This document shows positions 2,897 through 34,913 of a DNA stretch of 64,000 nucleotides, one piece after another. Origin of the DNA: Selaginella moellendorffii. Lineage: Eukaryota; Plantae; Lycopodiophyta. The notes below the pieces were generated by a model, which was not told the DNA's origin, ran no database searches, and saw only the letters and a program-made list of their open reading frames with translations. The stretch lies in the NCBI RefSeq assembly GCF_000143415.4, contig NW_003314270.1, positions 2,697,668 through 2,761,667 of the forward strand, read 5' to 3'. Made by a program: the position numbers and the translations under genes. Position 1 is the stretch's first letter. Every line of letters begins with the position of its first letter.

Positions 2897-2972
2897 TTTG
2901 CCATTCCTTCTATTTCTACTTTCGTTGCTTGGTAGAATAGTTCTTAGCTCTTCAAGTGGAAGCGTATAGGCA

Positions 2973-6108: not shown

Positions 6109-6187
6109 TCATAACTCAATCTGGTTTGATCAAGACTTAAAGGCAGTTCCCTTTAGGTCACGCTAACAATCGTTGTTTAATCTCGCC

Positions 6188-7084: not shown

Positions 7085-7410
7085 GAACAAGACACAAAGA
7101 AACTGTTTGTAGGTTATCGGATCCCCATGTAAAATCAAGTGACACTTGCCATTTTGCAGAGATTTGTTTCACGTTGCTATTCATGTAGCAAAATGCCAGA
7201 TTCAGTTTGACAAAACAAAGAAACGTATACATATGATTATTTGTGGCAAGTCGCTTATCGTGCGGCAAATACCGATTCAAGGCATTCCACGGAATCTAAA
7301 GAATATATAGTGTGTTTTGCTGGTCGATCAAGGCCATGTGATCCATCTTAGCACTCCCATCATCCCGCTCAACAAAATCAGCAGCTTGCAGGGAAAGGAC
7401 TTTGAGTTTA

Positions 7411-8004
7411 ATGGAAGAAGTGGAAAAGATTGCAGAAGCTAATGCTGTCCCCAACACAGAAGCATTGAAGTTTGCCAAATTGCTGATTACGCCTTTCACT
7501 TTTGTGGCTTCTACATGCCTCCAGTCAGGAATCTCCCTCATCAAAGAGAATGCAACGCACGTGGAGAAGGGGCGTTGCTTCCACCTCTTTATGGCTGCAA
7601 CCATCTCGGTATTTGGATTAGCAGGGTGTATGATAGCAATTGTTGATAACAAGGAAAGAAAAGCTCAGGAGCTCGACAATCTCATGTCCTCTCTTTGGGT
7701 GATCTTCTTTTCAAGCTTGTCTACGATGATGTTGCCGCTCCTCTTCAGCCTCCTGTATGTGGTCTACGATTTCATCGGAACCAAGGCATCGTGGTCAATA
7801 TTGAGTGCATATTTAGCTTTGGTCGTTGTAGTCTTCACTGGTTCCTACGTGAAAAAGCTGTTCCAAAGGATGAGGATTCCTCTGAAAGGCACTCCTGTCA
7901 TTTTACTTATCATTTACAATTTCGTTGTTACAGAGATTGGTTTTGTTTTTTTGCTCGTTTCTCTCGCAGTGCTGTGGCTCCTTCAAACCTTATGGTGCCT
8001 CTGA
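7411..8004 (+). CDS. Chimeric multipass membrane protein (type A N-terminus, type B core, novel C-terminus)
   Basis: 5' part matches the 614 copy; from ~7555 matches the 4571/24331 copies; a deletion at ~7913 removes the normal stop. Confidence 0.6.
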   Translation: MEEVEKIAEANAVPNTEALKFAKLLITPFTFVASTCLQSGISLIKENATHVEKGRCFHLFMAATISVFGLAGCMIAIVDNKERKAQELDNLMSSLWVIFFSSLSTMMLPLLFSLLYVVYDFIGTKASWSILSAYLALVVVVFTGSYVKKLFQRMRIPLKGTPVILLIIYNFVVTEIGFVFLLVSLAVLWLLQTLWCL

Positions 8005-8770
8005 CAATGGTGAAAAGAGCTTAAGAGGGGGTTGCCAATGTCTTCATTGATCGCATAGATAAGAAAATGGAGGATGATGATGTCGCTAATGCTCATCCAT
8101 TTCTTAGATACATGGAAAAATAGTGGCATGAATCTTGGAAGATTTTGATGAGGGGTTTTAAAGGTTTTAGTAGCTGCTCGTGGGCCAGCTTCGATGATTC
8201 TTTCCCGTTAGCCTCATTAGAATTAGCAATTGTTGCCCCTTCTGCCATGAACTTAAACGTGAAAAAAGTGAAGCAGAACCTGGTTCTTGGATTTTGTAGG
8301 AGACTAAAGTGTGATCCAGCTGCGAGGTTTAAAGGTAGATAACTAGTATAGGATCTCATTCCTTGTTTTTCCTTGTTATAGATTATATGGGAATTCAAAT
8401 TTTTGTAGTCTATGCCCTGTATGGTGCAGCTGGGACTAATATGAAATGCACAGTTCTATACTTGAGAGATTGAACAAATTATCCTTGACTGTTGTGTCGA
8501 GAAACCAACGACGACATGCACGAGCTCTTCCTGCCAAGTTTTGTTTCACAATCTCGTCCTTCTTCAGCCTCGGACCAGTGTTAATGGATCGACGCTCACG
8601 TATTTCACGTGTTGTTATACCAAATGTAAACTCTTGATTTAAACCTCAAAATCTCAAAAATCTCAAATTAAAGTTAAGTTATGCTTTAACAATGCACATT
8701 CTTATTCCCCCGTATCTAGCCAGGGAAAATATCTAAAGAGTATTTCTAATATTCCAAAAGTAACTACCAA

Positions 8771-19245: not shown

Positions 19246-21359
19246 ATGAGCAAGACGATGGGGCAGGAGATTAACCAGTACGCCCACAGCCCCGTCCACT
19301 GGGCCGTTGCCAGGGGCGATTACCCGGCGCTCAAGCGGATTCTCAGTGGCCTTCCCCGCCTCGCCAAGCCTGGCGAGGTTCGCACGGAGATCGAGTCGAT
19401 CCAGGCGGAGGTCAAGGCCGACGCCATCGCGGCGGTGATAGATCGCCGAGATGTGCCCAACCGGGAGACGCCACTGCATTTGGCGGTCAAGATGGGTGAC
19501 GAGACGTCGGTGGAGATGCTCATGCAAGCCGGGGCGGATTGGAGCCTCCAGAACGCGCAGGGATGGAGCGCCCTCCAGGAGGCGGTGTGCGCGCGAGAGG
19601 AAGGCATAGCCATGATCATCACGAGGTACTATCAGCCCATGGCTTGGGCGAAGTGGCTCCGGCGGCTGCCGAGAGTGGTAGGAACAATGCGGCGGATGAG
19701 AGACTTCTACATGGAGCTCACGTTTCACTTCGAGAGCTCGGTCATTCCTTTCATCTCCAGGATTGCTCCCAGCGACACTTACAGGATATGGAAGAAGGGT
19801 GCCAATCTCAGGGCGGACATGACACTCGCGGGCTTCGATGGTTTCAGGATCCAGAGGTCGGACCAGAGCTTTCTCTTTTTGGGCGATGGAAGCGACGACG
19901 GCAAGCTCCCTTCCGGGACCCTCTGTGTTCTCAGCCACAAAGAGAAGGAGATCATGAACGCTTTGGACGGTGCCGGAGTCCAGCCCACGGAGTCCGAGAT
20001 CGCGCAAGAGGTGGCGGTTTTGTCACAAACCAATATCTACAGGCCGGGGATCGATGTCACACAGGCCGAGCTCCAGCCGCATTTGACGTGGAGGAGGCAA
20101 GAGAAAACCGAGATGGTGGGCTCGTGGAAGGCGAAGATATACGACATGCATCATGTGACTGTCAGTGTCCGGTCGCGAAGGGTTCCAGGAGCCATGACAG
20201 ACGAGGAGCTGTTCGCTTCAGAAGAGGCCGAGGGAGAGGACGACGAAGACTACACCGATCTTCTAACCGAGGAGGAGAAGCAGCAACTGGACTCGGCGCT
20301 CAAGGCCGAGAATGGCGAGTTTATCGAGAAGGGATTTGACAAGGGTGGCAAGGACAACAGCAAGCTTCGCAGGCGCTTGGAGAACGGGGGGGATGATATT
20401 ATATTGGACGGATTGCTCGACGATGATATGAGCGTAGGGGGTGCTTCGTCTGGCTCGGATATCCACAGGGAGGACAGGAAGAGCTGGTTTAGCTGGGGGA
20501 AGAAGAGCGTCAAGCATGAAAACGCAAAGAAGGTGGAGCCGGCAAGGAAGTCTCTCAGCGTAGAAGTAGAGCGGGGTGGCAGGAATAACAGCAGAAAGTC
20601 TTTCGACAGGCGACCATCGAATTATAGAGCGGAGGACACATTCGAGCTCAAGAAGGGATACATGGACAAGCCTGCCAGGAAGAGCGTAAGCAGGGAGTCG
20701 ATTCACAAGCCTGGAAAGGCTGGCGCTGAAAACGAGTACCAGAAGGGATTGAGGCCGGTGCTGTGGCTCACGCCGGATTTTCCTCTGAGCACTGAGGAGT
20801 TTGTGCCGCTGCTGGACATCCTGTCCAACAAAGTGAAAGCGATCCGGAGGCTACGTGAGCTCTTGACAACCAAGCTACCGACTGGAACGTTTCCAGTCAA
20901 GGTAAGTTTATTTTCTTTTCTCGTTTCTCCAGTTCTTCGGTGACCAAACTTACTTTGTTTTTTCCTTCGTCTCAGCTGGCCATACCAGTAGTGCCCACCA
21001 TCAGAGTCGTCGTGACTTTCACTCGCTTTGACGAGATCCGCGCGCCGTCGGAGGAGTTTTCCACGCCACTCTCGAGTCCTCGCCACTTCCAAGACGCAAA
21101 AGCCAAGGAGGGCGATGCTCCGCAAGCACAGGCATCATCGGCGAGTTCATGGTTTTCGTGGATGCGACCTCACAGCCAGGCAAGCTCGTCGGCGGTGTCG
21201 GACGATCACGGGCCCGACTTGGTGGATCCGTTTCTCATCCCCAGTGACTACACCTGGGTGGACGTGAACGAGAAGAAGCGGCGAGCCAAGGACAAGAAAT
21301 CGAAGAGCAAGAAGAATAAGAAGCCTCCTCCAGCGCAGGGAGAGACAACGAAGGGCTAG
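19246..21359 (+). CDS. Ankyrin-repeat domain 13-like protein (ANK + GPCR-chaperone/DUF3424), intact copy
   Basis: ETPLHLAV, GWSALQEA, LPTGTFPVK; one intron 20902-20975. Confidence 0.9.
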
Positions 21360-21456
21360 TCTGCTTGCTAGCTCTCACCAGTTACAACAAACAAAGGCTT
21401 TTGGATTTTATTTTTTGTAGGCGATTCACACGAAATGAAATTCTTGTGTTCTTTCT

Positions 21457-21993
21457 TCACTTCTTGTATAGGGTGTAACCATACGAATTAGCAGCGATGA
21501 TGATCAGGAGCGTGATATAAGTGCCCCTCAGAGGAATCCTCATCAGCTTTTTCACGTAGGAACCAACGAGGATTAGAATGCCGACGAGAAAACACGCACC
21601 CATGGTCGACCACGATGCCTTCGCGTCGCTAAAGTCGTAGACAACATAGAGGAGGCTGAAAAAGAGTGGTGTCATCATCACGGACAAGCTCACCAAGAAG
21701 ATCATCCAAATAGAGATCACGAGCTTTTTGACCTCAGAAGCGTTTCCTTGTTCGTTCTCACCGATCGCTATTAGACACCTTGCCAATCCAAATGCTGAGA
21801 TGGTTGAAGCGAGAAGGAAGTGGAAGCAACGGCCCTTTTCCACTGGTGTGGCATTCTCTTTGATGAGGGAGATCCCTGACTGGAGGCATGTAGAAGCCAC
21901 AAAAGTGAAAGGCGTAATCAGCAATTTGGCAAACTTCAATGCTTCTTTGTTGGGGGCAGCATTAGCTTCTGCAATCTATCCCGCTTCTTCCAT
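21457..21993 (-). pseudogene. Multipass membrane protein type A with premature stop
   Basis: ATG 21993; codon 6 is TAG (21976-21978) where the 614 copy has AAG; otherwise open. Confidence 0.75.
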
Positions 21994-22339
21994 TAAACTC
22001 AAAGTCCTTCCCCTGCAAGCTGCCGATTTTGTTGAGCGGGATGATGAGAGTGCTAAGATGGATCACATGGCCTTGATCGACCAGCAAAACACATTATATA
22101 TTCTTTAGATTCCGTGGAATGCCTTGAATCGGTATTTCCTGCACGATAAGCGACTTGCCACGACTTGCCACAAATAATCAGATGTATACGTTTCTTTGTT
22201 TTGTTCTTACAAGTCAAACTGATTCTGGCATTTTGCTACATGAATAGCAACCGGAAACAAATCTCTGCAAAATGGCAAGTGTCACTTGATTTTACATGGG
22301 GATCCGATAAACTACAAACAGTTTCTTTGTGTCTTGTTC

Positions 22340-23236
22340 TTACATAATCTTGCAAATCAAGTTCCTGGTAAACAGCTCGCTGGTGTTGTTCACGATCCAG
22401 GGCTGACCAAGCACTTGCTCTACCGTCAGCCTCCGGCTTGGATAAACCTCCAACATCCCCATGATCAAATCCTTTGCCTCACTCGACACATCACTCCAAT
22501 CCAATGCAAACTCCACATTGTCCACGCTTTTCAACAATGACTCCACATAATCAGAGTGGTATTCAGGGAACGCCACCCTTCCGCTAACAAGCTCATATAG
22601 AATGAGTCCGAGCCCCCAGACGTCCACCGCTTGAGTGTAGTATTTCGGCCATCCGCCCTCACCAGCCCTGAGAACATCTGGCGACATATACCCAGGGGTG
22701 CCACAAAGGTGGTGCATCTCGTCTGCCCGGTCAGTCGCAACCCCAAAGTCAGACAGCTTCACCTCGTAAGGTTGCGCTGGATGCGTCAGCAAAACGTTTT
22801 CCAGCTTCATATCCCTGTGCACCACCCCAAGGTTGTGCATCTCCCTCAGCGTCTCGGCCAGGCTCTTGGTCACAAACGCCGCCTCTTCATCCGCCAGCCT
22901 CCCCACCATCTTTAGCCTGTCCCGGAGCGTGCACGAGCAGAGCTCCAAGATTAGGGATCCCCACCAGCGGCCCTTGAGCTCCTCCTCGACCATGTCGTAG
23001 ATCTCTAGTGTACCATGGCAGCCATTGAGTTTGAGCATGATTTCCTTCTCTCTCTCACCCGATCTCTCGAAGCTCTTAGCCGCTAGCAACTTACCACCCA
23101 TTCTAAAGCTTACAAGGTGTACAGTACCTTGCCCTCCCTTTCCAAGCTCAAAACCCACATCATACATCTTTCTCAAGGACGAGAGCTCCTCGCTCACGAC
23201 CAACTCACCACTCTCGACCGCTCTCCACACAGTCAT
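22340..23236 (-). CDS. Intronless minimal Ser/Thr kinase, cassette copy C
   Basis: 298 aa, near-identical to the 6188 copy. Confidence 0.9.
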   Translation of the reverse strand: MTVWRAVESGELVVSEELSSLRKMYDVGFELGKGGQGTVHLVSFRMGGKLLAAKSFERSGEREKEIMLKLNGCHGTLEIYDMVEEELKGRWWGSLILELCSCTLRDRLKMVGRLADEEAAFVTKSLAETLREMHNLGVVHRDMKLENVLLTHPAQPYEVKLSDFGVATDRADEMHHLCGTPGYMSPDVLRAGEGGWPKYYTQAVDVWGLGLILYELVSGRVAFPEYHSDYVESLLKSVDNVEFALDWSDVSSEAKDLIMGMLEVYPSRRLTVEQVLGQPWIVNNTSELFTRNLICKIM

Positions 23237-23313
23237 GGCGATTAAACAACGATTGTTAGCGTGACCTAAAGGGAGCTGCCTTTAAGTCTTGATGAAACCA
23301 GATTGAATTATGA

Positions 23314-23870
23314 TCAAGACTTGCAGACCTTTGCGGTGAATTCCACGACATAGAGATTGCTTCCTTTGCTCGTTTCTTTCGCTGTGCCCGTGGCTCCTTC
23401 AAATCTTCCGGTGCCACCAACGATGGCGAAAAGAGCTTGAGATCCAGCGGTCGAGCTCCCGGCCTCGCCTTGAAACTCGAGGCTGCTACCATCAGCAAAG
23501 GAGCAATGCGAGGACTGGAAGCTCCCCAGGCCGGTGTTTGCGAGGATTCCCATGTATGTCCCCATGGATAACCTGGTATAGCCCTTGGTGGAGACCGAGA
23601 ATGGGGCTGCGAATGTCTGCATTGATCCGGGTCTACCAGCGTTGTCTTTGGGAAGAACGTAGAACTCGTTTTGGTTGATCCCCGTGTCCGTAAACAGGGA
23701 CTGGCCTTGGAAGGTGTAGGTCTTGCACTGTTTCACAAGAAGAAATTCTTTAAGATCTTGACTAGCAATGCAAAGCATGGATAAGAAAATGGAGTCTATA
23801 CCTTGGAGGACGATGTTGATGTCGCTAATGCCAGGATGATCAAGAAGATCCCAATTCCAGCGGAGGCCAT
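23314..23870 (-). CDS. Secreted dirigent/AOC-barrel-like protein, copy C (exons 23870-23802, 23727-23314)
   Basis: Signal peptide exon plus FAIVGGTGRFEGATG. Confidence 0.75.
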
Positions 23871-24330
23871 TCGCCCCAATGTGTAGAATGCTCTAGCCTA
23901 GCACTCTCCATATCATAGATAAATAGATAGATACCAGAGTACACGTGAAATACGTGAGCGCATCGATCCATTAACGCTGGGCCGAGGCTGAAGAAGGTCG
24001 GTGACGACGAGATTGTGGAACAAAACTTGACAGGAAGAGCTCGTCGTTGTTTTCTCGTGGTTCTTGGATGTTTGTAGGAGACTAGAGTACGATCCAGCTG
24101 CGAGGTTTAAAGGTAGATAAAGATAACTAGTATTGCTCGTGTCTGATGTCATTCCTGTTTTTTTTCCTTTATATGGGAATTCAATTTTTTGTAGTCCACA
24201 CATTTTTTGATATGCCCTGTGTGGTGCAGCTGCGACTAATATGGAATGCACAGTTCTATACTTGAGAGACTGAACAAATTATCCTTGACCGTTGTGTGCG
24301 TTCTGCTTCAATTTTTTCACGTTTAAGTTC

Positions 24331-24873
24331 ATGGCAGAAGGGGCAACGGTTGCTAATTCTAATGAGGCTAACGGGAAAGAATCATTGAAGCTGGCCAAAT
24401 TGCTGATTACACCTTTCACTTTTGTGGCTTCCACATGTCTCCAGTCGGGAATCTCCCTCATCAAGCACGACGCAAAGCCCGCGGAGAAGGGGCGTTGTTT
24501 CCACCTCTTTTTGGCTGCAACCATCTCCGTATTTGGATTGGCACGGTGTCTGATAGCAATTGTTGAGAACAAGGAAAGAAATGCTCAGGAGCTCGACAAT
24601 CTCATGTCCTCTCTTTGGATGATCTTCTTTGCGAGCTTGTCTACGATGATGTCGCCGCTCCTCTTCAGCCTCCTGTATGTTGTCTACGACATCAGCGAAA
24701 CGAAGGCATCGTGGTCAATAATGGGTGCGTATTTAGTTTTGGTCGTTGTAGTCTTCACTCGTTCCTACGTGAAAAAGCTGTTCCAAAGGATGAGGATTCC
24801 TCTGAGAGGCACTCCTGTCATTTTACTTATCATCTTTGGTGCTAATACATATGGGTACACTTTATATAAATAA
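24331..24873 (+). CDS. Small multipass membrane protein type B (intact)
   Basis: Intronless 180-aa ORF from ATG 24331, paralog of 614. Confidence 0.65.
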   Translation: MAEGATVANSNEANGKESLKLAKLLITPFTFVASTCLQSGISLIKHDAKPAEKGRCFHLFLAATISVFGLARCLIAIVENKERNAQELDNLMSSLWMIFFASLSTMMSPLLFSLLYVVYDISETKASWSIMGAYLVLVVVVFTRSYVKKLFQRMRIPLRGTPVILLIIFGANTYGYTLYK

Positions 24874-24895
24874 AAGACTTTACAATTTCCTTTGT

Positions 24896-25060
24896 TACAG
24901 AGATTGTTTTTGTTTGTTTGCTCGTTTCTCTCGCAGTGCTGTGGCTCCTTCAAACCTTATGGTGCCTCCGACAATGGCGAAAAGAGCTTAAGAGGGGGCT
25001 GCCAATGTCTTCATTGGCCGCATGGATAAGAAAATGGAGGACGATGATGTCGCTAATGCT
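24896..25060 (-). pseudogene. Internally deleted dirigent-like remnant (further copies ~3825-3990 +, ~7928-8092 -)
   Basis: Degenerate match to the exon-2 3' end and the exon1/intron junction of the dirigent-like gene. Confidence 0.6.
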
Positions 25061-25153
25061 CATCCATTTCTTAGATACATAGAAAAACAGTGGCATGAAT
25101 CTTGGGAGATTTTGATGAGGGGGTTTAAAGGTTTTAGCAGCTGCTCGTGGGCA

Positions 25154-26623
25154 ATGCAGCAACACCAGGAGTGGGCGGGGCTCCGGTCGTGGAGGTCCCC
25201 GGCGGCGCCACCCAATGAGCGGCGCCGCTGGGGGGATGCCGGCCCTGAGATGGTGGCGACTCCCTTAGATCACGCTGGTTCTTTCTCTCCTCCCCCTCGC
25301 AGCCTCGCGGAATGGGGCGCCTTGATCCTCGCCACCCCTCGTCCACTCTCCAAAGCCCACTTGACGCACCACGCTTACAAGCTTTGGTGCAGTGGTGCTC
25401 TTCCGATTGGTGTAGCGGCCGCCATGGATTCTCCCGCAAGGCCAGAGAAGCCTCAGCTGGTAAGATTCTTCTTTTTTTTCTTGAAGTTCTTGTTCTTGCT
25501 GTGCCTATAGGTGCATCCAAGGAGAGTTCCAACAGCCAAAGTTCTGGGGATATCTCCCAGCGTTCATATGATCCATAACTTGGCACACATCGAGCTCAAC
25601 GCTGTGGATCTTGCATGGGACACTGTGGTGCGCTTCTCGGCGTCGGGTGGCGAGCTCGATTCGCAGTTTTTCGCGGATTTTGCTCACGTTGCGGACGACG
25701 AGAGCCGGCATTTCTGCTGGTGCGAGCAGCAATTGAACGAGCTTGGTTCCAGGTATTTAGAAACTTGTAGTTTTCTCTTCATTTATCGTTTCCTTACCAT
25801 AGTTATGGAGATGTTCCAGCGCACAATTTGCTCTGGAAGGATTGCCAGAAAACTTCTGCAAGCGTGGATGCTCGTCTCGCAGTTATTCCAATGGTCCAGG
25901 TGCCTATATGTTTTTTTTTTTTTTTTTTTTTCTGATCTTTAGTTCTCCAACTTTTCTATTCGAGTTTCTCTACTGTTTCAGGAAGCTCGGGGTTTGGACG
26001 CTGGGCCGAGGCTGGTGGAAAGACTGAAGCAGCTCGGTGATGATAGAAGTGCCAATATTGTGGAACAAATCTCCCAGGAAGAGCTTGCGCATGTCGCTGT
26101 TGGTGTCTCGTGGTTCCTGGATGTTTGCAGGAGACTAGAGTGCGATCCAGCCGCGAGGTTTAAAGGTGGATAAACTAGTACAGATCTTTTCTTCGATTTC
26201 GTGTCTGATCTCCTCCTTGTTTTCCTTGTTACGATCGATCAGAGTTAATGACGAGCTTGAACGTGGAGCTGAGAGGTCCATTCAACCACAAAGCGAGAGA
26301 GGCAGCTGGACTTCCTCAATCTTGGTACTTTTCATCTCATACTTCCTCGAAAATCTCTTTAACGATCGATCAATCCGGAGGTACGACACCGCTATGGATA
26401 CAAAACTGGAGCAAAAACCTCTGTCACCTCAGGTACGCTCTCGCCAAACTCGCTCTAAAAGCTTCGTACTTTGCTTTTACACAGGCCGGGACCATCTCTT
26501 CCTGCCTTCCCGAGGCAAGTTCTTCTCGGTCCGTGATCTCGTCCGTCTCACATTTTTGTGTTCTTCCAGGTTTGCTCGAGATTGGCAATTGTTGTGTCTT
26601 CCGAGAGCGACAATCTCCTCTAG
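25154..26623 (+). CDS. DUF455 ferritin-like (putative di-iron) protein
   Basis: Multi-exon; HNLAHIELNAVDLAWD, DESRHF, EARGLDAGP, EELAHV, GPFNHKAR; 5' end uncertain. Confidence 0.85.
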
Positions 26624-27006
26624 AAAAGCTCGTTTTAAGATCCGATCCGATCCAATCCAGCCCAGGTAACTAAAGATCTTTTGCTCAAACTTTACTTCGG
26701 TTTTTCTTTGGTTTGAAGTCTCGATCTGGCGGTGGATCCGCAGAGCCCTCAAAAATCCCGCGCTGCCGCTGCTGCCGCCGCTAGAAGAAAATTTTACACC
26801 AACTTTCATAAGGGAACGCGGCTACCTTATCTACCGTGCGAATATCCCGCCGCATATTCAGCCATTTAAAGCATCTCTCCAGGACGAACAACAAACTCCG
26901 AGAGGGAAAGACAAGAGAGAGAAGAGCTTCACACTCAAGGTCTCATTTTTTCTCTTGAGTCTTTCGATTTTCTCTCGAGCAAACGCGGCAAGCAGGAAGA
27001 GGTCTC

Positions 27007-28688
27007 ATGGGTCTACAGGGAGAAGTAAGATTGAGCGATCTCAAAGTGAAAGTCCACAAGATCTCGACGGTGGTTCCAGCCGGAGAGACCGAGCAATGCA
27101 CGCTCTTCATGTCCAACATCGACCAGGTACTGGCTTACTACGTCGAGACGGTCTACTTCTACGACAAGGGGGGTGACGCCGCGGCGGAACTTCTCCAGGA
27201 GGCGCTTGGGAGAGTTCTCGTCCCCTACCATTTCCTGGCTGGGAGATTCAAGCTCAATCCCAAGCTGGGGAGGATGGAGCTGGAATGCAACCGCGAAGGA
27301 GTCTCCTTTGCTGCCGCGAGCTGCGAGCTGCGAGTCTCGGATCTGGGCGATATCAGTGTTCCAAATCCGCTCTTCCGCAATCTCGTTCTCCTTCCGGACG
27401 AAGGCAAGGCTCTCAACGATGCTCCTCTCATCACAATCCAGGTTCGTTCCTTGTTTTTCTAGCGTTTGTTCTTGGTTCTTCCTTGGATAGAGCTTGGTTT
27501 CTTTGGGTGTTGAAATGCAGTTAATGCATGATGATCGTTTGGTTGCTGGCTTTACACTTTTTTATGCGGTGGTTTTCTGTTCTTGCCAGGCATCTCTTTT
27601 GCATTGCAGGACCGCATTTAATATCAGCGTGCTTGGATTCTTTACTCGTGAATTTTCTAGTCGTGACTCTTGATCTTTCCTTCGCGTTTTTACGTGAATT
27701 CTTGGACTTTGCGTCAGTGCTTGACCGATCTCGACTAAAAAATCCATTTTTTTTTCTTTCCACACTCCAGGTGACCAAGTTTTCGTGCGGTGGCTTCGCA
27801 ATGGGCGTCTACATGAGCCACGCATCGCTCGACGGCATCGGCGCGCTCGAGTTCTTCATGAACTACTGCTCGGTTGCCCGCGGCGATGGAATGCAAGTCA
27901 TCCCAAAGCCGGACCGGACGATGCTCGCCGCTCGCTCGCCACCGCAAGTAACTTTCGACCACACCGAGTACGTGAAGCTCAGCGATCTCATGGCCGCCGC
28001 CGCTGCCGCCAAGGCCACCGCCTTCACCACCCCGGACTCCGCCAACGCCGCCACCCGAGCCCCACAAAAGCACGTCTACAAGAGCTTCTCCTTCACTCCC
28101 GACCGGATCGCCCAGCTCAAGAAGGCCGTCCTCGATGAATCCACCGCGACGATCGACAAGTGTTCTTCGTTCGAGGTGATCGTCGCCCATCTCTGGCAGG
28201 CGAGAACTCGGGCCGTGGAGATGGATCCCGACTCGCCCTCCAAGCTCTTCTTCGCGGTGGACATTCGCAACAAGGTAGATCCTCCGCTGCCAAAGGGATT
28301 CGCCGGGAATGGCGTCCTCTCGGCGCCTTGCGTGAAAACTCTCGCGCGGGACGTCCGCGAGAACTCGCTGGGCTACTGCGTACGGAAGGTCCAGGAGGCC
28401 ATCGCCGCGGTGACCGACGAGTACGTACGGTCGTCCATCGACCACGGGGAGCTCTACCGCGGCGTGCCGGCGCTCCACGGTGGGATATTCATCTCCCCGT
28501 GGTGGAAGATCCCCTTCCAGGAGCTCGACTTTGGGTGGGGGCGGCCGCTCTACGCGGGGCCCGTGGTAAACGACCGGGTAGAATTTGTTTTACTGCTCCA
28601 CAATGGTAAACAGGATGGCGGGCTCAATGCATACCTGGCGCTGGAGCCGGCGGAGATGGACAAGTTTGAGAAGCTCCTCCAAGTTTAG
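27007..28688 (+). CDS. BAHD acyltransferase
   Basis: HASLDG (HxxxD) and DFGWG motifs; conserved intron after Q (27442-27770). Confidence 0.92.
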
Positions 28689-28847
28689 CGAGGAAAGCAT
28701 CTGGGCCGTTGGATCGTTTGCCTTTAAATTGAAAGGAAAAATAGGAAAATGGTTTTTTATCGGACGGTGGACGGCCTCTCCGATGTGAAGCCCATCCCGA
28801 CCGTCGGATTTGTTTCTTAAACCTCTCTTTGTTTCAAGCTTTTGGCT

Positions 28848-29794
28848 ATGGCGTCCCCATCGTCGCTGTACGCCGATCTCCGTGGCGCTCGAGCGGCGCC
28901 CGCATTGCCGTCGCAAATTTCTTCCTCCTCCTCCTCGGCCGTGGCGTTTCCTCTGCGCGCGCGGATCGGTGGATCGCTGAGCGTTTCTTCGTCGTCGATC
29001 GGACGCAGGGATCTTGGGATTGGCAAATGTAGCAGCGCAGGAGAGGCGGCGAATGTGGACATCAAGCAAGTGCCGATCGAGAAGAGTGAGTGGTTTTTCC
29101 CTCTCGATTGTCGATACTTCCCTTTGCATGTCCTTGTTTTCATGCTCTTTGGATCAGGGTTTGAAGAATTTCCTTCTGTGCTGGACATCAACAAGATCCG
29201 GGACATTCTTCCTCACAGGTACAGTGTTTATACTGTCCTTGGCATTTGTATCTCTCTTGTTTGGCTCTTGTTTTTTCATTTGATCTCTCCTGTTTTGCTC
29301 GTAGATATCCATTTTTGCTAGTAGACAGAGTGATCGAGTATCAACCCGGTGTCACGGCAGTAGGGATTAAAAACGTGACGATCAATGACAATTTCTTCCC
29401 CGGCCACTTTCCGGAGAGACCGATCATGCCTGGAGTTCTCATGGTTGAGGTAGAAAACGATGAGACAGAGAATTTTCTTGCGTAGTTCTAATACGTTCAT
29501 GCTTTTAAATCTTCTGTCCAGGCAATGGCTCAAGTTGGTGGACTCGTGATGCTCAAGCCCGAAGCTGGCGGCTCCAAGGAGATTTTTTTCTTTGCGGGCG
29601 TGGACAAGGTCCGGTTCCGCAAGCCAGTGATCGCCGGTGACACTCTGGTGATGAGGATGAACCTCGTCAAGTTCCAGAAGCGATTTGGCATCGTCAAGAT
29701 GGAAGGCAAGGCCTATGTTGGCAAGAATGTGGTTTGCGAGGGGGAATTCACCTTGGCAATGGCATCATCAGACGATGAAGCAACCAGCAAATGA
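28848..29794 (+). CDS. FabZ: Plastid 3-hydroxyacyl-ACP dehydratase
   Basis: Transit peptide; [34 protein letters not shown]. Confidence 0.93.
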
Positions 29795-30652
29795 GGTTTG
29801 GGCTTCTTTTTGCTTTCGGAGCTCATAATCAAGTTTTACACGATATTATTCTACGTTTGAATGTAAATGATAAAGATGGTCAAGCTATTGTCTGCTAGCT
29901 CCATCGATCTTATGTTCGATCTTATGCTCTTTAGTTGAACCTTGGAAAATTTAAAACACCGCCGAAGCTTTGTCTAGTCCCAAATGTTCTTCCCTGTAAT
30001 GTCGACTGATATTTCCCCATCAATTACTCGGAGTAGGACCCAAATTGCGACGCATAATAACAAACACTGCTTAATATGCAAATTACCAAGTAGATTCCAA
30101 GCTGCACAACACGTTTGCATGCCTTGTTTGAATGATCCTCCCATTGCATTTCTTTCAACACTGGAGTTTTTTCTCAATAAAAGACTAGACTTGGTCTTGA
30201 GAATTTTAGGATGTGCTTGACCAGTAAATGCACCACAATGTCATACGTTGACTCCTGCAATTCTCAAGCCAGATTATGTGGTCAAAGAATGTTTGCTACT
30301 CGTTTTGCTTGGCTCTACGTTTATGCTTCCGCTTGATCACACATTATAACACGTCTTTTTCCTTTGTTAAGTTTAGGAAACTAGAATACGCGGCTATCCT
30401 TTTTGGATGCAAGTCTCAATCGAAATAGACGTATTTATAATATACAAGACAACAATTCTGCCATACGCGACCCCATGCTCGTCCTCGTCAGAATTGGACG
30501 GCCAGACCTTCTATAAAGAAGAAGACAAGGCAAATCCAGCATAGCAATCCAGAATCCCTTTAGCCAGTGCTCTCAGTGATCTACCACGAGCAATATTGCA
30601 AGTTTGGGTTAATACCGAATTCACAGCAGTGCTACTTCGATCTATCCATTCT

Positions 30653-32224
30653 ATGGTATCTATGGCCTATCCAAAGGACAAGATTGCCTTCTTGTATATC
30701 CACACAGAGAGTGGCGAGCTTGCCTTCATGTCACAGTCTGCGTTGCAATATGTCCCAGTTACCGGCACCCGGAGTGATTTCACGTTTTCTTCCATTGTTG
30801 CAAGCAGCAATGCAGAAGATTTAGAGGAGGTCAAGAAAGGCACACGCTCCATTGCTCCGGAGATGAACAGGTACACCATTTCCATGATTGGAGTTGATTC
30901 ACGCACTTCATGGGAAGCCACAGTCTATGAGAGATACATTGGCAATGGTTTCGAGGGTGTGGTTTTCACCCAGGATCCCAGCCAGGGCACTCTTCAGGAG
31001 GCTAGCGAGATGAGTTATCTGGCCTCTCTCCTGCTGGAAAACAGCGTCATGACCAGGGATTGTCTCCTGGAGCCCTTCACTTCACACACACCTCAAGAGG
31101 TGGACGACATCACCTCCCAAGTTGTGGACATCATCGAGAAGAATTACATCCACTTTCCAAACCACGACCAGTGGTTCACCAGTGGGGGCAAGCAGAGGTT
31201 TGCCGACAAGTTGAGGTACCACGTCGCAAGAAACATTCCGCTCGAGTTCATCTTGCCGGCTTTTCCTGTCAAGTCGTGTAATCCTGACAAGACACTGGGA
31301 ATGTGCCCGGACAAAGCCGAGGAGCTGGCCATTCATTCCATGAAGATCGTGGCCGATCTCATCAAGGCAGTATACCCTCCAGGCGTGCACTACAACGTCG
31401 TCTCGGATGGCCATGTCTTCTCCGATCTCGTCGGCTCTGACGATGCTGCTGTGGAGTCTTATGGCGAGATGTTTTCGGACATGGCACACAACTTGTATCC
31501 CGGCTTGGTCAGTTTCTTCCGCCTGGATGAGTTTCTGCTGGACAACCACAGCGAGGACAGCATTACGAAGCTTATATCCAACACCACCGTGGAACATCCC
31601 GTTGCTACCGAGCTCACCGCCAATGCAGAGAATGCCAGGCGAGCTCTCATGTGCTTGTTTGGATGTGACGAGTCAACTGTCACCAAGGAGATCAAGGATG
31701 ACCCGGAGACTCGCAATCTTTATCGTGGCTTCTCCAGATTCATGCTCGAGGACTTGTACGAACACAAGAGCTGCAAGAACCTTCCGTCAAAGTCGGCCAA
31801 GAAGAAGCTGTGTAGCCAGGTTGCCTTCCTCATGATCCTCAGGAACCGTGCCTTCTCGGCCATGGTGGAGTGGCTCTTCCCGTTGCAGCTGCGCATCTCC
31901 ATCCACCCACATCCAAACAGAGGCCCCAAGTATGGCATCAACATCATTCATTCCTCTCTAGTGGCAGCACAGCGGTCCTCCGAGGAAAAAAACTTCCACA
32001 TCCCAACCCCATGGCACAATACGGTGGTGGAGCTGGCGGATGGCAAGTTCATGCTGCTGCATTCCAAAGTCATCCGAGGTTCAAGTGTGCATGCTGGAGA
32101 AATGGCATGCGAGCAACTCCAGTTGAGTCAACAGTTGCTTCTCAAGCGTGAAGGCTATAGAATGATGCTGATGAGATATCCAGATGGCAGACCCAGCCAC
32201 TACAAGCAAGTCTGCGTCTGCTAA
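30653..32224 (+). CDS. Dit1/PvcA-family isocyanide (isonitrile) synthase, fungal Dit1-type, intronless
   Basis: LPAFPVKS, PDKAEELA, VYPPG, VSDGHVFSD, LYRGFSRFMLEDL, RISIHPH, GPKYGI, HIPTPWHN motifs; TATA-like TATAAAG at ~30512. Confidence 0.88.
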   Translation: MVSMAYPKDKIAFLYIHTESGELAFMSQSALQYVPVTGTRSDFTFSSIVASSNAEDLEEVKKGTRSIAPEMNRYTISMIGVDSRTSWEATVYERYIGNGFEGVVFTQDPSQGTLQEASEMSYLASLLLENSVMTRDCLLEPFTSHTPQEVDDITSQVVDIIEKNYIHFPNHDQWFTSGGKQRFADKLRYHVARNIPLEFILPAFPVKSCNPDKTLGMCPDKAEELAIHSMKIVADLIKAVYPPGVHYNVVSDGHVFSDLVGSDDAAVESYGEMFSDMAHNLYPGLVSFFRLDEFLLDNHSEDSITKLISNTTVEHPVATELTANAENARRALMCLFGCDESTVTKEIKDDPETRNLYRGFSRFMLEDLYEHKSCKNLPSKSAKKKLCSQVAFLMILRNRAFSAMVEWLFPLQLRISIHPHPNRGPKYGINIIHSSLVAAQRSSEEKNFHIPTPWHNTVVELADGKFMLLHSKVIRGSSVHAGEMACEQLQLSQQLLLKREGYRMMLMRYPDGRPSHYKQVCVC

Positions 32225-32504
32225 GTTGCTGTTTGATTCTTTCAAGGCTTTGGGTAAATTTCCCAAGTCTAAGCCCATTCTTTTAATAAAAAATGAGTAC
32301 ATACCATTTTTTCTTTACTATCCTTACTGGATCTAGCAGCGTTGTCTTTGGGAGTGTGAGGTCCAACTGAAACGTTAAAGATCTTGTATTGCATCATAAG
32401 ATCCAGATCTCAATCTCTTTATTTACGCTCGAATCACAATCCAATGTGCATTTTTAAGATTCAAAGGCGGCCGCCTTTTAGGTCATACCAATCCTTTAAT
32501 CGCC

Positions 32505-33389
32505 ATGACTGTGTGGAGAGCGGTCGAGAGTGGTGACTTGGTCGTGAGCGAGGAGCTCTCGTCCTTGAGAAAGATGTATGATGTGGGTTTTGAGCTTGGA
32601 AAGGGAGGGCAAGGCACTGTACACCTTGTAAGCTTTAGAATGGGTGGTAAGTTGCTAGCGGCTAAGAGCTTCGAGAGATCGGGTGAGAGAGAGAAGGAAA
32701 TCATGCTCAAACTCAATGGTTGCCATGGTACACTAGAGATCTACGACATGGTCGAGGAGGAGCTCAAGGGCCGCTGGTGGGGATCCCTAATCTTGGAGCT
32801 CTGCTCGTGCACGCTCCGGGACAGGCTAAAGATGGTGGGGAGGCTGGCGGATGGCGAGGCGGCGTTTGTGACCGAGAGCCTGGCCGAGACGCTGAGGGAG
32901 ATGCACAACCTTGGGGTGGTGCACAGGGATATGAAGCTGGAAAACGTTTTGCTGACGCATCCAGCGCAACCTTACGAGGTGAAGCTGTCTGACTTTGGGG
33001 TTGCGACTGACCTGCACCACCTTTGTGGCACCCCTGGGTATATGTCGCCAGATGTTCTCAGGGCTGGTGAGGGCGGATGGCCGAAATACTACACTCAAGC
33101 GGTGGACGTCTGGGGGCTCGGACTCATTCTATATGAGCTCCTTAGCGGAAGGGTGGCCTTCCCTGAATACCACTCTGATTATGTGGAGTTATTGCTGAAA
33201 AGCGTGGACAATGTGGAGTTTGCATTGGATTGGAGTGATGTGACGAGCGAGGCAAAGGATTTGATCATGGGGATGTTGGAGGTTTATCCGAGCCGGAGGC
33301 TGACGGTGGAGCAAGTGCTTGGTCACCCCTGGATCGTGAACAACACCAGCGAGCTGCTTACCAGGAACTTGATTTGCAAGATTATGTAA
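32505..33389 (+). CDS. Intronless minimal Ser/Thr kinase, copy D (4-aa activation-loop deletion)
   Basis: 294 aa; ATDLHHLCGT versus ATDRADEMHHLCGT in the other copies. Confidence 0.85.
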   Translation: MTVWRAVESGDLVVSEELSSLRKMYDVGFELGKGGQGTVHLVSFRMGGKLLAAKSFERSGEREKEIMLKLNGCHGTLEIYDMVEEELKGRWWGSLILELCSCTLRDRLKMVGRLADGEAAFVTESLAETLREMHNLGVVHRDMKLENVLLTHPAQPYEVKLSDFGVATDLHHLCGTPGYMSPDVLRAGEGGWPKYYTQAVDVWGLGLILYELLSGRVAFPEYHSDYVELLLKSVDNVEFALDWSDVTSEAKDLIMGMLEVYPSRRLTVEQVLGHPWIVNNTSELLTRNLICKIM

Positions 33390-33543
33390 GAACAAGACAG
33401 AAAGAAACTGTATGTACATTATACATTATCATGTAAAATGTACATAGCAGAATGGATTCCATGTAGTAAGAACAAGACAAAGCTATAATCTATTTAACGA
33501 TTCTTCCGTAATCATTCTTTCGATGATTGTATGTACATTTGTT

Positions 33544-34913
33544 TCATTTCTTCTCCGTTGCAACGCCAACGACGACGTTGCTCACCTGTTATCAAGCATC
33601 CTCGTTACATTGGTCGCAGGATCAAAACGCACGGACGTACCAGTTTTCCACTCTCGTCAATCGTCATCGGGTTTTCAACGACGACTGTCTGAGGCTGTGG
33701 TCGAGGCTGCGGCTGCACAAGCAACAAGAACAGCAAATCATTCTCGAGAAACTGCAAGGAATAGTTACCAATTCCTGAGTTTGGAGCAGCGGCATGTATG
33801 GAGGAGGCGTGTGCGGCGGGAAAGGAAACCTCACATTGCTCATCTGTTGGAGAGAAAGATCAGAGAAAAACACACCGATGGAAAGGATCCTTACAGTGAT
33901 TGGTGTGATGTATTGGCACAAAGCGCATTTCACCGATTGTGCTCCGAACGCATAAACAAGCGTTGTGCTGCATCCTCCACAGTTTACGTGCGCTATCTGG
34001 TTCGCTGCGAGGAAGAGAAAAGATATCTCAAGGACTGGAAAAATCTACGAACTTAACTTACCATCCATTGCAACGTTTACTGTGTGGCAGCACGAGCACT
34101 GAACGCTCGTCGCTCCACGGATGTAGAGAAGCAAAGTCCGACATCCTCCACACACAAGTTGTGCCATCTCTGGTCCTGGACGTTCACAACTAGAAACCCA
34201 GACATCCGCAATCAAAAGGAGGAAGAGGAACATACCTTGCGGTGAAACTGGTGTGATGCAGCTACACAGAGCACACCGGACGTTGGTTGCTCCATGTGGA
34301 TATATGAGAAGTGTTCTACAGCCACTGCAAATCAACTGGCTTTGAGCACCTGGAAGAAGTTACATCAGCTCACTATTCTATCAATGATTCAGTACTATAG
34401 ACAGTGATAACTATTTTATCAAGCAATGAAAGTAACAAGAACTCTTCTATCAGGGAACGAAAGTAGCAAGAGCTAAGAACAATTCTACCAAGCAATGCAA
34501 GTAACAAGAACTCTTCTATCAGGCAACGAAAGTAGCAAGAGCTAAAAACTAGTCTACCAGTAGAAATAGAAGGAATGACATTAGTTCTATCGATCGAGAA
34601 CAATGAACAAACCTGGAAGAGGAAGGAATGGGAGAAGAGGAGGATGTGATGGATATGGCGCGATAGGAGCGGGCAGAGAAGGCGGCGTCCATGGATTGCT
34701 CCTGATCAAGCTGCTGCTGCTGCTAGAACCAGCCAAATTGTTGGCGGCGCTGGTATCAGCTTCAGCAGGCGATCCAGACGGCGCCGCCGAGCTCCCCAAT
34801 CCCGCCCCTCCCTGCGCCGCTACTAGCACCACCGCGGCAGCCTCATTCTGATCCGGTGGCGGAGGCGCGTCGCCCCCGCCTCCAGCGATCAACGCACTGT
34901 TGCCGCCGAGCAT
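33544..34913 (-). CDS. LSD1: LSD1/LOL-type zinc-finger protein (cell-death regulator)
   Basis: Three CxxC..(RTLL/STTL)xY..GAxxVxCxxC fingers; C-terminal [25 protein letters not shown]. Confidence 0.9.
34420..34557. repeat. 69-bp tandem duplication in LSD1 intron 1
   Basis: caagcaatg..aagtaacaagaactcttctatcagg..aacgaaagtagcaagagctaa present twice. Confidence 0.85.

What the first reader, a model, noticed from the sequence alone, without database searches (positions are those of the whole stretch)
30653..32224. Fungal Dit1-type isocyanide synthase embedded in a land-plant chromosome
Seen: an intact, intronless 523-aa ORF with the Dit1/PvcA motif set (LPAFPxKS, SDGHVFSD, RISIH, TPWH). It also has features I associate with ascomycete Dit1 rather than bacterial PvcA/IsnA: a ~140-aa N-terminal extension, LYRGFSRFMLEDL, GPKYGI and HIPTPWHN. 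It lies between intron-rich plant genes (FabZ, LSD1) and has a TATA-like box. Known: this family converts amino-acid amines plus ribulose-5-P into isocyanides (or N-formyl products in yeast spore-wall dityrosine), and is typical of fungi and bacteria rather than plants. Inference: a fungus-to-plant horizontal transfer that could give the plant isocyanide/formamide chemistry for metal-chelating defence or the spore wall. No TauD/PvcB dioxygenase or Dit2 P450 lies nearby, so tailoring would have to be plant-recruited.
Basis: partly seen in the sequence, partly recalled or inferred. Interest (0 to 1): 0.92.

Follow-up and report, generated by a model that had tools for sequence, protein, structure and literature searches.

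The report
Fungal-type isocyanide synthase gene in Selaginella
This is a real, intact and weakly transcribed gene of the spikemoss Selaginella moellendorffii for a fungal Dit1-type isocyanide synthase. It is one copy of a large plant gene family that most likely descends from one old fungus-to-plant transfer, it is already annotated in public databases, and its product in the plant is untested.

Summary
Window 30653-32224 (+) is an intact ORF of 523 aa (520 aa as annotated, start 30662). It matches Pfam DIT1_PvcA (E 2.5e-82) and its model has the PvcA/PIsnA fold.

The window is S. moellendorffii scaffold GL377574.1. The neighbours FabZ and LSD1 are spliced plant genes in RNA-seq. The ICS gene is transcribed at about 2% of FabZ depth.

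It is not a lone insert. RefSeq names many S. moellendorffii paralogs 'spore wall maturation protein DIT1'. They form one clade (100/100) inside a eukaryotic Dit1 clade that excludes bacteria (100/100).

No other plant appears in searches of about 15 billion proteins. The nearest relatives are chytrid fungi (37-44% identity over the full length, N-terminal extension included).

Two basal paralogs keep a phase-1 intron at exactly the nucleotide where chytrid and ascomycete Dit1 genes have one. This copy lost it precisely, so 'intronless' is a derived state.

dN/dS is 0.15-0.19, and GC3 equals that of the neighbours.

The donor lineage is unresolved by AU tests. No Dit2 P450, DTR1-type transporter or PvcB-type gene lies nearby.

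The scan found this family before on other DNA of this genome, and a 2018 paper mentions it in one line. The plant's chemistry is unknown.

The parts
30512..30517 (+). TATAAA box about 140 nt upstream of the first ATG; candidate core promoter
   Evidence: Sequence read. RNA coverage begins within 30570-30766 (X17 reads, depth 1.05), and the X1 contig starts at 30637. Function is inferred only.
30653..32224 (+). Dit1-type isocyanide synthase gene, intact and intronless. 523 aa from the ATG at 30653, or 520 aa from the ATG at 30662 as in the public model. Stop TAA at 32222-32224.
   Evidence: The RNA contigs and reads that cover it show no joints. dN/dS is 0.15-0.19 against paralogs.
30653..31213 (+). 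N-terminal extension (about 185 aa) found in eukaryotic Dit1 proteins, with the YPKD..F.Y motif
   Evidence: It aligns along its length with chytrid proteins: 98% query coverage with Powellomyces P0013 and Geranomyces P0015. It is absent from bacterial homologs, which match only from about residue 183. dN/dS here is 0.23-0.26. The model gives moderate to low confidence for this part.
31214..32077 (+). DIT1_PvcA catalytic domain (residues 188-475)
   Evidence: Pfam E 2.5e-82. Foldseek against PIsnA/PvcA gives E 4e-20 to 6e-18 and TM by target 0.78-0.83. All family-invariant residues are kept. dN/dS is 0.09-0.135.
31430..31431 (+). Site of precise intron loss, one base after the SDGHVFSDL codons. 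Paralogs P0005 and P0006 and fungal Dit1 genes carry a phase-1 intron exactly here.
   Evidence: Junction sequences; exon maps.
32285..32290 (+). AATAAA, a candidate polyadenylation signal about 60 nt after the stop codon
   Evidence: Sequence read. DNA similarity to paralog L002 extends to 32314, about 90 nt past the stop. Function is inferred.
27007..28688 (+). Neighbour: plant BAHD (HCT-like) acyltransferase gene
   Evidence: PF02458. The best solved relative is hydroxycinnamoyl transferase 6dd2, E 2.2e-54.
28848..29794 (+). Neighbour: FabZ-type dehydratase gene with three spliced introns, strongly expressed
   Evidence: Joints 29085/29158, 29216/29303 and 29447/29520 are seen at depth 73-128.
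32433..33439 (+). Neighbour: intronless 294-aa protein kinase gene (ORF 32505-33389). It is a dispersed duplicate of about 1 kb, matching 6132-7135 and 22289-23314. No RNA reads were seen.
33544..34913 (-). Neighbour: zf-LSD1 gene, spliced and expressed
   Evidence: CT..AC joints on the + strand, that is GT..AG on the minus strand.

Best explanation
The ORF is a bona fide nuclear gene of Selaginella moellendorffii (scaffold GL377574.1, about 2,728,320-2,729,891). It encodes a Dit1-type isocyanide synthase.

It is one dispersed member of a large family, with tandem arrays and several single copies. All members descend from one acquisition of a fungal-type, intron-bearing Dit1 gene, most likely from an early-diverging (chytrid-like) fungus. 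The family then diversified in the plant under purifying selection. In the subclade that holds this copy, the one retained fungal intron was lost precisely.

By homology (inferred, not shown), the enzyme condenses the alpha-amino group of an amino acid, most likely tyrosine or another aromatic one, with a carbon from ribulose-5-phosphate. The product would be an isonitrile, which may be released as such or hydrated to the N-formyl amino acid, as proposed for yeast Dit1.

This copy is transcribed at a low level in the tissues sampled. It has no fungal partner gene next to it, so any tailoring or export would need unlinked or plant-derived genes.
For: Identity and integrity:
- Intact ORF; PF05141 at 276.9 bits.
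- PvcA/PIsnA fold: TM by target 0.78-0.83, E down to 4e-20.
- All residues invariant across 15 plant and fungal sequences are kept.

Plant residence:
- The scaffold is 3.15 Mb and the neighbours are ordinary plant genes.
- FabZ and LSD1 introns are confirmed by RNA reads.
- GC3 is 0.665, against 0.674 and 0.684 for the neighbours.

Expression:
- Stranded raw reads with the same mate orientation as the + strand gene FabZ, depth 0.4-2.5 against 52-107 for FabZ.
- Contigs from two further RNA-like runs, taken as RNA because their FabZ contigs are spliced, cover 30637-32187 in pieces.

Family and single origin:
- Paralogs at 71-86% identity, plus more divergent ones, all from S. moellendorffii.
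- The Selaginella clade has 100/100 support.

Eukaryotic and fungal affinity:
- The clade with fungi excludes bacteria at 100/100.
- Bacteria reach at most 28-34% identity, over the domain only.
- Chytrids give 37-44% identity, with full-length coverage in two of them.
- The N-terminal YPKD and C-terminal PDGRPSHY motifs are shared with the chytrids but not with the Dikarya sequences in the alignment.
- A phase-1 intron sits at the identical nucleotide in paralogs P0005 and P0006, four chytrids and one ascomycete.

No other plant appears among 5.8 billion clusters or 1.84 billion representatives above the chytrid level.

Selection: dN/dS 0.15-0.19 overall and 0.09-0.135 in the domain; dS 0.41-1.09.
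Against: - The tree does not place Selaginella inside Fungi. Fungal monophyly with Selaginella outside is not rejected (p-AU 0.166), nor is Selaginella+Dikarya (p 0.50). Selaginella+chytrids has only 57/66 support.
- Whether other Selaginella species or lycophytes are represented in the protein collections is unknown, so 'restricted to this species' is not shown.
- Expression of this copy is very low in the runs laid, and the contig-only runs are RNA by inference only.
- No assay exists. The substrate, and whether the product is an isonitrile or a formamide, are inferred.
- No long-read or DNA-read check of the FabZ-ICS-kinase junctions was made, because the single reads call went to RNA.
Confidence: 0.8

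Rival explanations
1. Vertical inheritance: a Dit1-type gene was present in an early eukaryote or in the common ancestor of plants and fungi. It survived only in the Selaginella lineage among plants.
For: The AU test does not reject Selaginella lying outside a monophyletic Fungi (p 0.166). The shared intron shows only a common intron-bearing eukaryotic ancestor.
Against: No other plant or alga appears above the fungal hits in searches of about 15 billion proteins. This reading would need many independent losses across Archaeplastida. Lim et al. 2018 (PMC5974471) report only sporadic non-fungal eukaryotic occurrences.
Confidence: 0.08
2. Fungal contamination or misassembly: the ORF belongs to an associated fungus and was wrongly joined to plant DNA.
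For: The protein is fungal in type. No DNA-read check of the junctions was done here.
Against: - It lies deep inside a 3.15-Mb scaffold, between plant genes whose splicing is confirmed.
- GC3 equals that of the neighbours.
- Five other paralog loci were fetched; the three with called neighbours sit in different plant contexts.
- Identity to any sampled fungus is at most 44%, so no sampled fungus could be the source.
- The paralog introns are 55-57 nt, like the neighbouring plant introns of 46-86 nt.
Confidence: 0.02
3. Direct transfer from bacteria of a PvcA/IsnA-type gene.
For: The window copy has no intron, and the family is common in Actinomycetota and Pseudomonadota.
Against: - Bacteria form a separate clade at 100/100.
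- They reach only 28-34% identity, over the domain alone.
- None of the 80 listed bacterial matches reaches into the first 120 residues of the N-terminal extension.
- Basal Selaginella paralogs carry a spliceosomal intron at the fungal position.
Confidence: 0.01
4. This particular copy is a redundant, near-silent duplicate on its way to decay. It has no function of its own, even if the family is functional.
For: Read depth is about 2% of FabZ in two raw RNA runs. Many paralogs and fragmentary copies exist. An earlier scan note describes a dead half-copy elsewhere.
Against: - The reading frame is intact after dS 0.41-0.50 from its nearest paralogs.
- dN/dS is 0.15-0.19, and 0.09-0.12 in the domain, for those two pairs.
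- All invariant residues are kept.
- It is transcribed in runs from at least three studies.
- Low bulk expression is also compatible with tissue-specific or induced expression.
Confidence: 0.09

Closest known systems
Chytrid Dit1-type proteins (Powellomyces hirtus P0013, Geranomyces variabilis P0015, Phlyctochytrium arcticum P0012, Blyttiomyces helicus P0008)
   Same: Highest identity outside Selaginella, 34-44%. The alignment is full-length in two of them and includes the N-terminal extension. The YPKD and PDGRPSHY motifs are shared. Basal Selaginella paralogs have a phase-1 intron at the same nucleotide.
   Different: The chytrid genes have 2-4 introns in the ICS part, against 1 or 0 in Selaginella. 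They sit next to an OPT transporter, usually with AMP-binding and beta-lactamase-fold genes nearby, or are fused to an MFS transporter. None of this is found at the plant locus.
Yeast and ascomycete Dit1 (S. cerevisiae DIT1, which works with the P450 Dit2 and the transporter Dtr1 to make spore-wall N,N'-bisformyl dityrosine)
   Same: Same Pfam family and the same eukaryotic clade. An N-terminal extension is present. The same intron position is seen in the ascomycete Emydomyces.
   Different: Identity is 31-40%. The C-terminal PDGRPSHY motif is absent in the Dikarya sequences aligned. Ascomycete dit1 is typically paired with dit2: PMC10153163 says so, and the Emydomyces locus has an adjacent P450. 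No such P450 lies in the window or near four paralogs.
Bacterial isonitrile synthases PvcA (3e59), PIsnA (9dh4/9dhm), IsnA
   Same: Same catalytic fold and the same conserved motifs: LPAFPxKS, SDGHVF, SIHP and TPWH.
   Different: They are about 300-330 aa and lack the eukaryotic N-terminal extension. Identity is 23-34%. They form a separate clade and are usually paired with a PvcB/IsnB-type Fe/2OG dioxygenase (established knowledge; PMC5974471).
Other S. moellendorffii paralogs, named in RefSeq 'spore wall maturation protein DIT1' (for example XP_002975629.2, XP_002965297.2)
   Same: 71-86% identity, the same architecture, and one clade.
   Different: This copy is a dispersed single gene, not part of the tandem arrays. 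It shares DNA similarity with the paralogs only over the coding region, plus about 90 nt of 3' UTR with L002. Like P0002 and P0003, it lacks the intron that P0005 and P0006 keep.

Membership tests
DIT1_PvcA isocyanide synthase family (PF05141) | Match to the family profile above the curated threshold | tested here: met
   276.9 bits against a cut-off of 26.4, E 2.5e-82, profile positions 2-266 of 273.
DIT1_PvcA isocyanide synthase family (PF05141) | PvcA/IsnA three-dimensional fold | tested here: met
   AlphaFold2 model with pTM 0.78, mean pLDDT 73.5 and most 10-residue blocks of the domain at 81-94. Foldseek against 9dh4, 9dhm and 3e59 gives E 4e-20 to 6e-18 and TM by target 0.78-0.83.
DIT1_PvcA isocyanide synthase family (PF05141) | Conserved motif residues (LPAFPxKS.N..K, SDGHVFSD, R.SIHPH..GPK, H.PTPWHN) | tested here: met
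   All 60 invariant columns of the 15-sequence plant and fungal alignment are present in the window protein. The motifs also align to PIsnA.
DIT1_PvcA isocyanide synthase family (PF05141) | Catalysis: amino-acid amine plus ribulose-5-phosphate gives an isonitrile | not testable with these tools
   Needs an enzyme assay. The residues that bind the substrate in 9dh4 could not be mapped without the coordinates or a paper (one search found none).
Eukaryotic (fungal) Dit1 clade | Groups with fungal Dit1 to the exclusion of bacterial homologs | tested here: met
   The eukaryote clade has 100/100 support in the careful ML tree (52 rows, LG+C20+F+G4, bacterial outgroup). SH-aLRT is 100 in the 83-row tree.
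Eukaryotic (fungal) Dit1 clade | N-terminal extension of about 150-200 aa, homologous to that of fungal Dit1 | tested here: met
   98-99% query coverage with P0013 and P0015, and a shared YPKD..F.Y motif. Bacterial matches start at about residue 183.
Eukaryotic (fungal) Dit1 clade | Phase-1 spliceosomal intron one base after the SDGHVFSD[L/C] codons | tested here: not met
   The intron is absent in this copy: the sequence is continuous across 31430|31431. It is present at the identical nucleotide in paralogs P0005 and P0006, in Powellomyces, Phlyctochytrium, Geranomyces and Spizellomyces, and in the ascomycete Emydomyces. It is absent in Violaceomyces. The reading is secondary loss within the family.
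Eukaryotic (fungal) Dit1 clade | Linked partner genes (Dit2-type P450; Dtr1-type MFS transporter, either fused or as a neighbour) | tested here: not met
   tblastn with a Dit2-like P450 (P0124:1-560) and the MFS part of P0122 found nothing at E<=1e-3 in the 64-kb window or within 10 kb of four paralogs. The rest of the genome was not searched.
Horizontally acquired gene (fungus to plant) | Absent from other plants while widespread in the donor group | tested here: met
   Every hit above chytrid level is S. moellendorffii in a word-indexed search of 5.8 billion clusters, a profile search and an exhaustive phmmer of 1.84 billion representatives. The odd fragments were identified by name. Caveat: how well other lycophytes are represented in these collections is unknown.
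Horizontally acquired gene (fungus to plant) | Recipient clade nested inside the donor group with support | tested here: inconclusive
   The backbone among two chytrid clades, Selaginella and Dikarya is unresolved. AU p is 0.166 for fungal monophyly and 0.50 for Selaginella+Dikarya. Selaginella+chytrids has 57/66 support.
Horizontally acquired gene (fungus to plant) | Physically integrated in host DNA and adapted to the host | tested here: met
   It lies on a 3.15-Mb scaffold with spliced plant neighbours. Its GC3 equals theirs. The paralog introns are of plant size. It is transcribed in S. moellendorffii runs. Long-read junction support was not tested.

The most novel reading that the evidence does not exclude
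Selaginella moellendorffii uses its expanded, selected Dit1-type family to make isonitrile or N-formyl amino-acid metabolites. I know of no report of this chemistry from land plants, and found none in the papers searched. Tailoring would be done by recruited plant enzymes rather than by the fungal partners. Hints: two plant 2OG-Fe(II) oxygenase genes lie 4-9 kb from paralog P0005, and unrelated BAHD acyltransferase genes lie within about 3 kb of both this copy and paralog P0006.
Probability: 0.3. Interest if true: 0.75.

Novelty: new member of a known kind. Interest (0 to 1): 0.45.

Why it matters
Isocyanide synthases make reactive, metal-binding natural products in bacteria and fungi, and the spore-wall dityrosine precursor in yeast. 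A lycophyte family of a dozen or more copies under purifying selection suggests that a plant lineage adopted this chemistry after a fungal transfer.

This can be tested directly: express a copy, feed amino acids plus ribulose-5-phosphate, and look for isonitrile or formamide products. It would add a clean, intron-marked case of fungus-to-plant gene transfer.

The claim needs tempering. The genes are already annotated in RefSeq as DIT1. A 2018 paper notes the family in 'one species of moss'. This scan has reported the family several times from other parts of the same genome. This locus adds detail (precise intron loss, no linked partner genes, low expression) rather than a new discovery.

Tried and rejected
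1. Conserved gene cluster around the ICS. tblastx among the window and the five paralog loci fetched (L002/L003 overlap) found no shared sequence outside the ICS coding region, apart from the overlapping tandem loci L002/L003. blastn shows that similarity ends within about 90 nt of the CDS. The BAHD genes near this copy and near P0006 are therefore not co-duplicated. Their co-location may be chance, so it is recorded only as a hint.

2. The kinase as a partner of the ICS. It is a dispersed duplicate of about 1 kb, with 94-96% identical copies elsewhere in the window. It is absent from paralog loci L002/L003 and has no RNA reads. Rejected.

3. Fungal partner genes (Dit2 P450, Dtr1 MFS). None in the window or near four paralogs.

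4. Pinning the donor. Two trees and three AU or constraint tests left the backbone unresolved. The shared intron is also present in an ascomycete, so it does not single out chytrids.

5. Literature. No paper combines Selaginella with isocyanide synthase or dityrosine. The 'DIT1' hits were the plastid dicarboxylate transporter. No accessible paper on the 2025 PIsnA structures was found, so substrate-binding residues were not mapped.

6. The sigma-70 and terminator scan of the upstream region is irrelevant for a eukaryotic gene and was ignored.

7. An early notebook offset for converting L001 to window coordinates was wrong (20652). The correct offset is 20661, and all coordinates in this report use it.
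Full report
**1. The observation**

An open frame runs from 30596 to 32224 on the + strand. The public gene model starts at the second ATG (30662, 520 aa), which matches the MAYPKD-type starts of the paralogs.

Pfam DIT1_PvcA matches residues 188-475 with 276.9 bits, against a threshold of 26.4 (E 2.5e-82). The best solved relatives by sequence are the isonitrile synthases PIsnA (9dhm, 9dh4) and PvcA (3e59).

An AlphaFold2 model (pTM 0.78, most blocks of the domain at pLDDT 81-94) superposes on those structures. Foldseek gives E 4e-20 to 6e-18 and TM 0.78-0.83 by target length.

**2. Where it is**

The exact protein is encoded on Selaginella moellendorffii GCA_000143415.2, scaffold GL377574.1 (3.15 Mb), near position 2.728 Mb. 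In window coordinates, the called neighbours are:

- DUF455 (25022-26784)
- an HCT-like BAHD acyltransferase (27007-28688; best solved relative 6dd2, E 2.2e-54)
- FabZ (28848-29794)
- the ICS gene
- a 294-aa protein kinase (32505-33389)
- zf-LSD1 (33544-34913, minus strand)
- an IF-2B/APH fusion
- ATP-citrate lyase
- a RING protein

I laid two raw stranded RNA-seq runs and the contigs of two further runs on 28600-34500.

- FabZ has three GT..AG introns supported by 73-128 reads each, at depth 52-107.
- LSD1 has five or six minus-strand introns, at depth 10-20.
- The ICS gene has depth 0.4-2.5. Nearly all reads share the mate orientation of the + strand gene FabZ, and there are no joints.
- Contigs of the two other runs cover 30637-32187 in pieces, at 3-48x word depth. 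Their FabZ contigs are spliced, so they are RNA.
- The kinase gene has no reads at 97% likeness.

The ICS gene is therefore transcribed, unspliced, at roughly 2% of the FabZ level in these samples.

A TATAAA lies at 30512-30517 and an AATAAA at 32285-32290. GC3 of the gene (0.665) equals that of the kinase (0.684) and of the last FabZ exon (0.674).

Contamination is not a tenable reading.

**3. It is one member of a family**

The homolog search returned S. moellendorffii paralogs at 71-86% identity (P0002-P0006), plus more divergent or partial models at 49-61% (P0007, P0010, P0014, P0049).

The members of four of these 90%-identity clusters are all S. moellendorffii. RefSeq names them 'spore wall maturation protein DIT1'. 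Many of them lie on two scaffolds of 1.97 and 2.09 Mb, so these are tandem arrays. P0002 occurs twice, 13,960 bp apart.

The window copy is a dispersed single gene. Its DNA similarity to four paralog loci is confined to the coding region, plus about 90 nt of 3' UTR with L002. No flanking gene is shared between loci.

Pairwise dN/dS against four paralogs is 0.15-0.19 overall. It is 0.09-0.135 in the catalytic domain and 0.23-0.26 in the N-terminal extension. dS ranges from 0.41 to 1.09. The duplications are therefore old, and the genes have been held under purifying selection.

**4. Origin**

*Distribution.* Outside Selaginella, the best hits are chytrid fungi: Blyttiomyces, Cladochytrium, Zopfochytrium, Phlyctochytrium, Powellomyces and Geranomyces, at 34-44% identity. 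Ascomycete Dit1 proteins follow.

A profile search with Selaginella and chytrid sequences added Borealophlyctis and Spizellomyces, and still found no other plant. An exhaustive phmmer against 1.84 billion representatives found nothing above the chytrid level except Selaginella. The odd high-identity fragments all proved to be S. moellendorffii gene models.

*Bacteria.* Bacterial homologs reach 28-34% identity. They cover only residues from about 183 to 467 (up to 517 in a few) and lack the N-terminal extension.

*Trees.* In ML trees rooted on 12 bacterial sequences (LG+C20+F+G4):

- the eukaryotic sequences form a clade at 100/100
- the Selaginella sequences form a clade at 100/100
- the backbone among two chytrid clades, Selaginella and Dikarya is unresolved

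AU tests reject neither fungal monophyly with Selaginella outside (p 0.166) nor Selaginella+Dikarya (p 0.50). Selaginella+chytrids is in the best tree with only 57/66 support. The tree therefore shows a single origin and a eukaryotic, non-bacterial affinity, but it does not name a donor.

*Rare characters.* Selaginella shares two motifs with the chytrids in the alignment but not with the Dikarya sequences: the N-terminal YPKD..F.Y motif and the C-terminal PDGRPSHY motif. It also shares a one-residue insertion (LPSK) with two chytrids. These could be ancestral states.

*The intron.* This evidence is more telling.

- The basal paralogs P0006 and P0005 each carry one GT..AG intron of 55-57 nt. 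It lies one base after the codons for SDGHVFSDL (phase 1, splitting a GTT codon).
- Powellomyces, Phlyctochytrium, Geranomyces and Spizellomyces have a phase-1 intron at exactly the same nucleotide, and so does the ascomycete Emydomyces.
- The basidiomycete Violaceomyces lacks it.

The plant genes therefore derive from an intron-bearing gene of the fungal Dit1 type. This excludes a direct bacterial source. Because the intron is also ascomycete, it does not single out chytrids.

The window copy, P0002 and P0003 read straight through this site (CTC|GTC at 31427-31432). These three, with P0004, form a derived subclade (99/98). The intronless state is therefore a precise secondary loss, not a sign of a recent or prokaryotic insertion.

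*Weighing.* Transfer from a fungus, probably an early-diverging one, followed by expansion in the plant is the best reading (about 0.8). It rests on the following:

- the gene was found in no other plant sampled
- it is broadly present in Fungi
- the similarity is full-length
- the intron position is shared

Vertical descent with massive loss remains formally possible (about 0.08).

**5. Likely function**

By homology, the enzyme should convert the amino group of an amino acid into an isonitrile, using a carbon from ribulose-5-phosphate. That is the chemistry established for PvcA/IsnA. Yeast Dit1 is thought to yield N-formyl-tyrosine through such an intermediate (background from PMC10153163, and PMC5974471). 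This step is inferred, not shown.

The partner genes of the fungal systems are missing at this locus.

- No Dit2-like P450 and no Dtr1-like MFS transporter was found in the 64-kb window or within 10 kb of four paralogs.
- By contrast, chytrid genes sit beside an OPT transporter, usually with AMP-binding and beta-lactamase-fold genes nearby, or are fused to an MFS transporter.
- The Emydomyces gene has a divergent P450 neighbour.

Two weak, post hoc hints of plant-side partners exist. Two plant 2OG-Fe(II) oxygenase genes lie 4-9 kb from paralog P0005. Unrelated BAHD acyltransferase genes lie within about 3 kb of both this copy and paralog P0006.

**6. What is known already**

RefSeq annotates these genes as DIT1. 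Lim et al. 2018 (PMC5974471) state that ICS proteins occur in 'one species of moss' among Ensembl genomes. That is presumably this spikemoss, and the paper does not analyse it further. No paper in the library combines Selaginella with isocyanide synthase or dityrosine.

Earlier notes of this scan reported the same family from other pieces of the same genome, with the same general conclusion. I re-tested two of their leads here, the 2018 paper and the fungal intron position, and both hold.

**7. Verdict**

It belongs to the DIT1_PvcA family and to its eukaryotic Dit1 clade. Fungus-to-plant transfer is well supported in outline, but its donor and date are unresolved.

This locus adds the following:

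- the precise intron loss
- the absence of linked fungal partners
- the low expression
- the finding that the adjacent kinase is an unrelated dispersed duplicate

Interest is moderate (0.45). The possible plant isonitrile chemistry is attractive and testable, but the existence of the family is already on record.

Noticed in passing
window 1-8600 and 19800-26000; also 32433-33439: Two large inverted segmental duplicates at 92-97% nucleotide identity. Each carries a 294-298-aa 'minimal' protein kinase gene, at 6188-7081 (+) and 22343-23236 (-), and a partial copy sits at 1-273. A third copy of about 1 kb, holding only the kinase gene, lies right after the ICS gene and shows no RNA reads.
   Followed up: partly
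L087 (Powellomyces), L088 (Phlyctochytrium), L089 (Geranomyces): In three Spizellomycetales genomes the Dit1-type gene sits beside an OPT oligopeptide transporter. In Phlyctochytrium and Geranomyces, AMP-binding (one of them NRPS-like) and beta-lactamase-fold genes also lie nearby. This looks like a conserved chytrid biosynthetic cluster.
   Followed up: no
P0009, P0121, P0122, P0123, P0185; L090: A second chytrid clade (Spizellomyces, Borealophlyctis, Cladochytrium, Irineochytrium) encodes Dit1 fused to an MFS transporter. In effect this is a Dit1-Dtr1 fusion. In Spizellomyces, an aminotransferase and a TRI12-type MFS gene are neighbours.
   Followed up: no
L084 15331-16510 and 19821-20999: Two plant-type 2OG-Fe(II) oxygenase genes lie 4-9 kb downstream of ICS paralog P0005. 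Bacterial and fungal ICSs usually work with an Fe/2OG dioxygenase of a different family. This could be chance.
   Followed up: no
window 27007-28688; L085 5858-7239: BAHD acyltransferase genes lie within about 3 kb of two ICS paralogs, this copy and P0006. The two BAHD genes are not close relatives of each other (no tblastx hit at E<=1e-8 and above 60 bits). The RNA-like run X1 shows a contig at word depth about 71 ending at 28794, just past the BAHD 3' end.
   Followed up: partly
L002/L003 (GL377593.1): P0002 is encoded twice, 13,960 bp apart. The two repeat units are nearly identical (96-100% over many kb), so this is a very recent tandem duplication inside the ICS array.
   Followed up: partly
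window 28870-29716: In both raw RNA runs, FabZ reads carry alternative bases at about 35-45% frequency at eight sites. This is consistent with the two haplotypes of S. moellendorffii. Contigs over the ICS gene differ from the window at about 1% of sites, probably the other allele.
   Followed up: no
window 34174-34236 (minus-strand LSD1 gene): Two alternative joints, 34174/34235 and 34189/34236, occur in the same LSD1 intron. This indicates alternative splice-site use.
   Followed up: no
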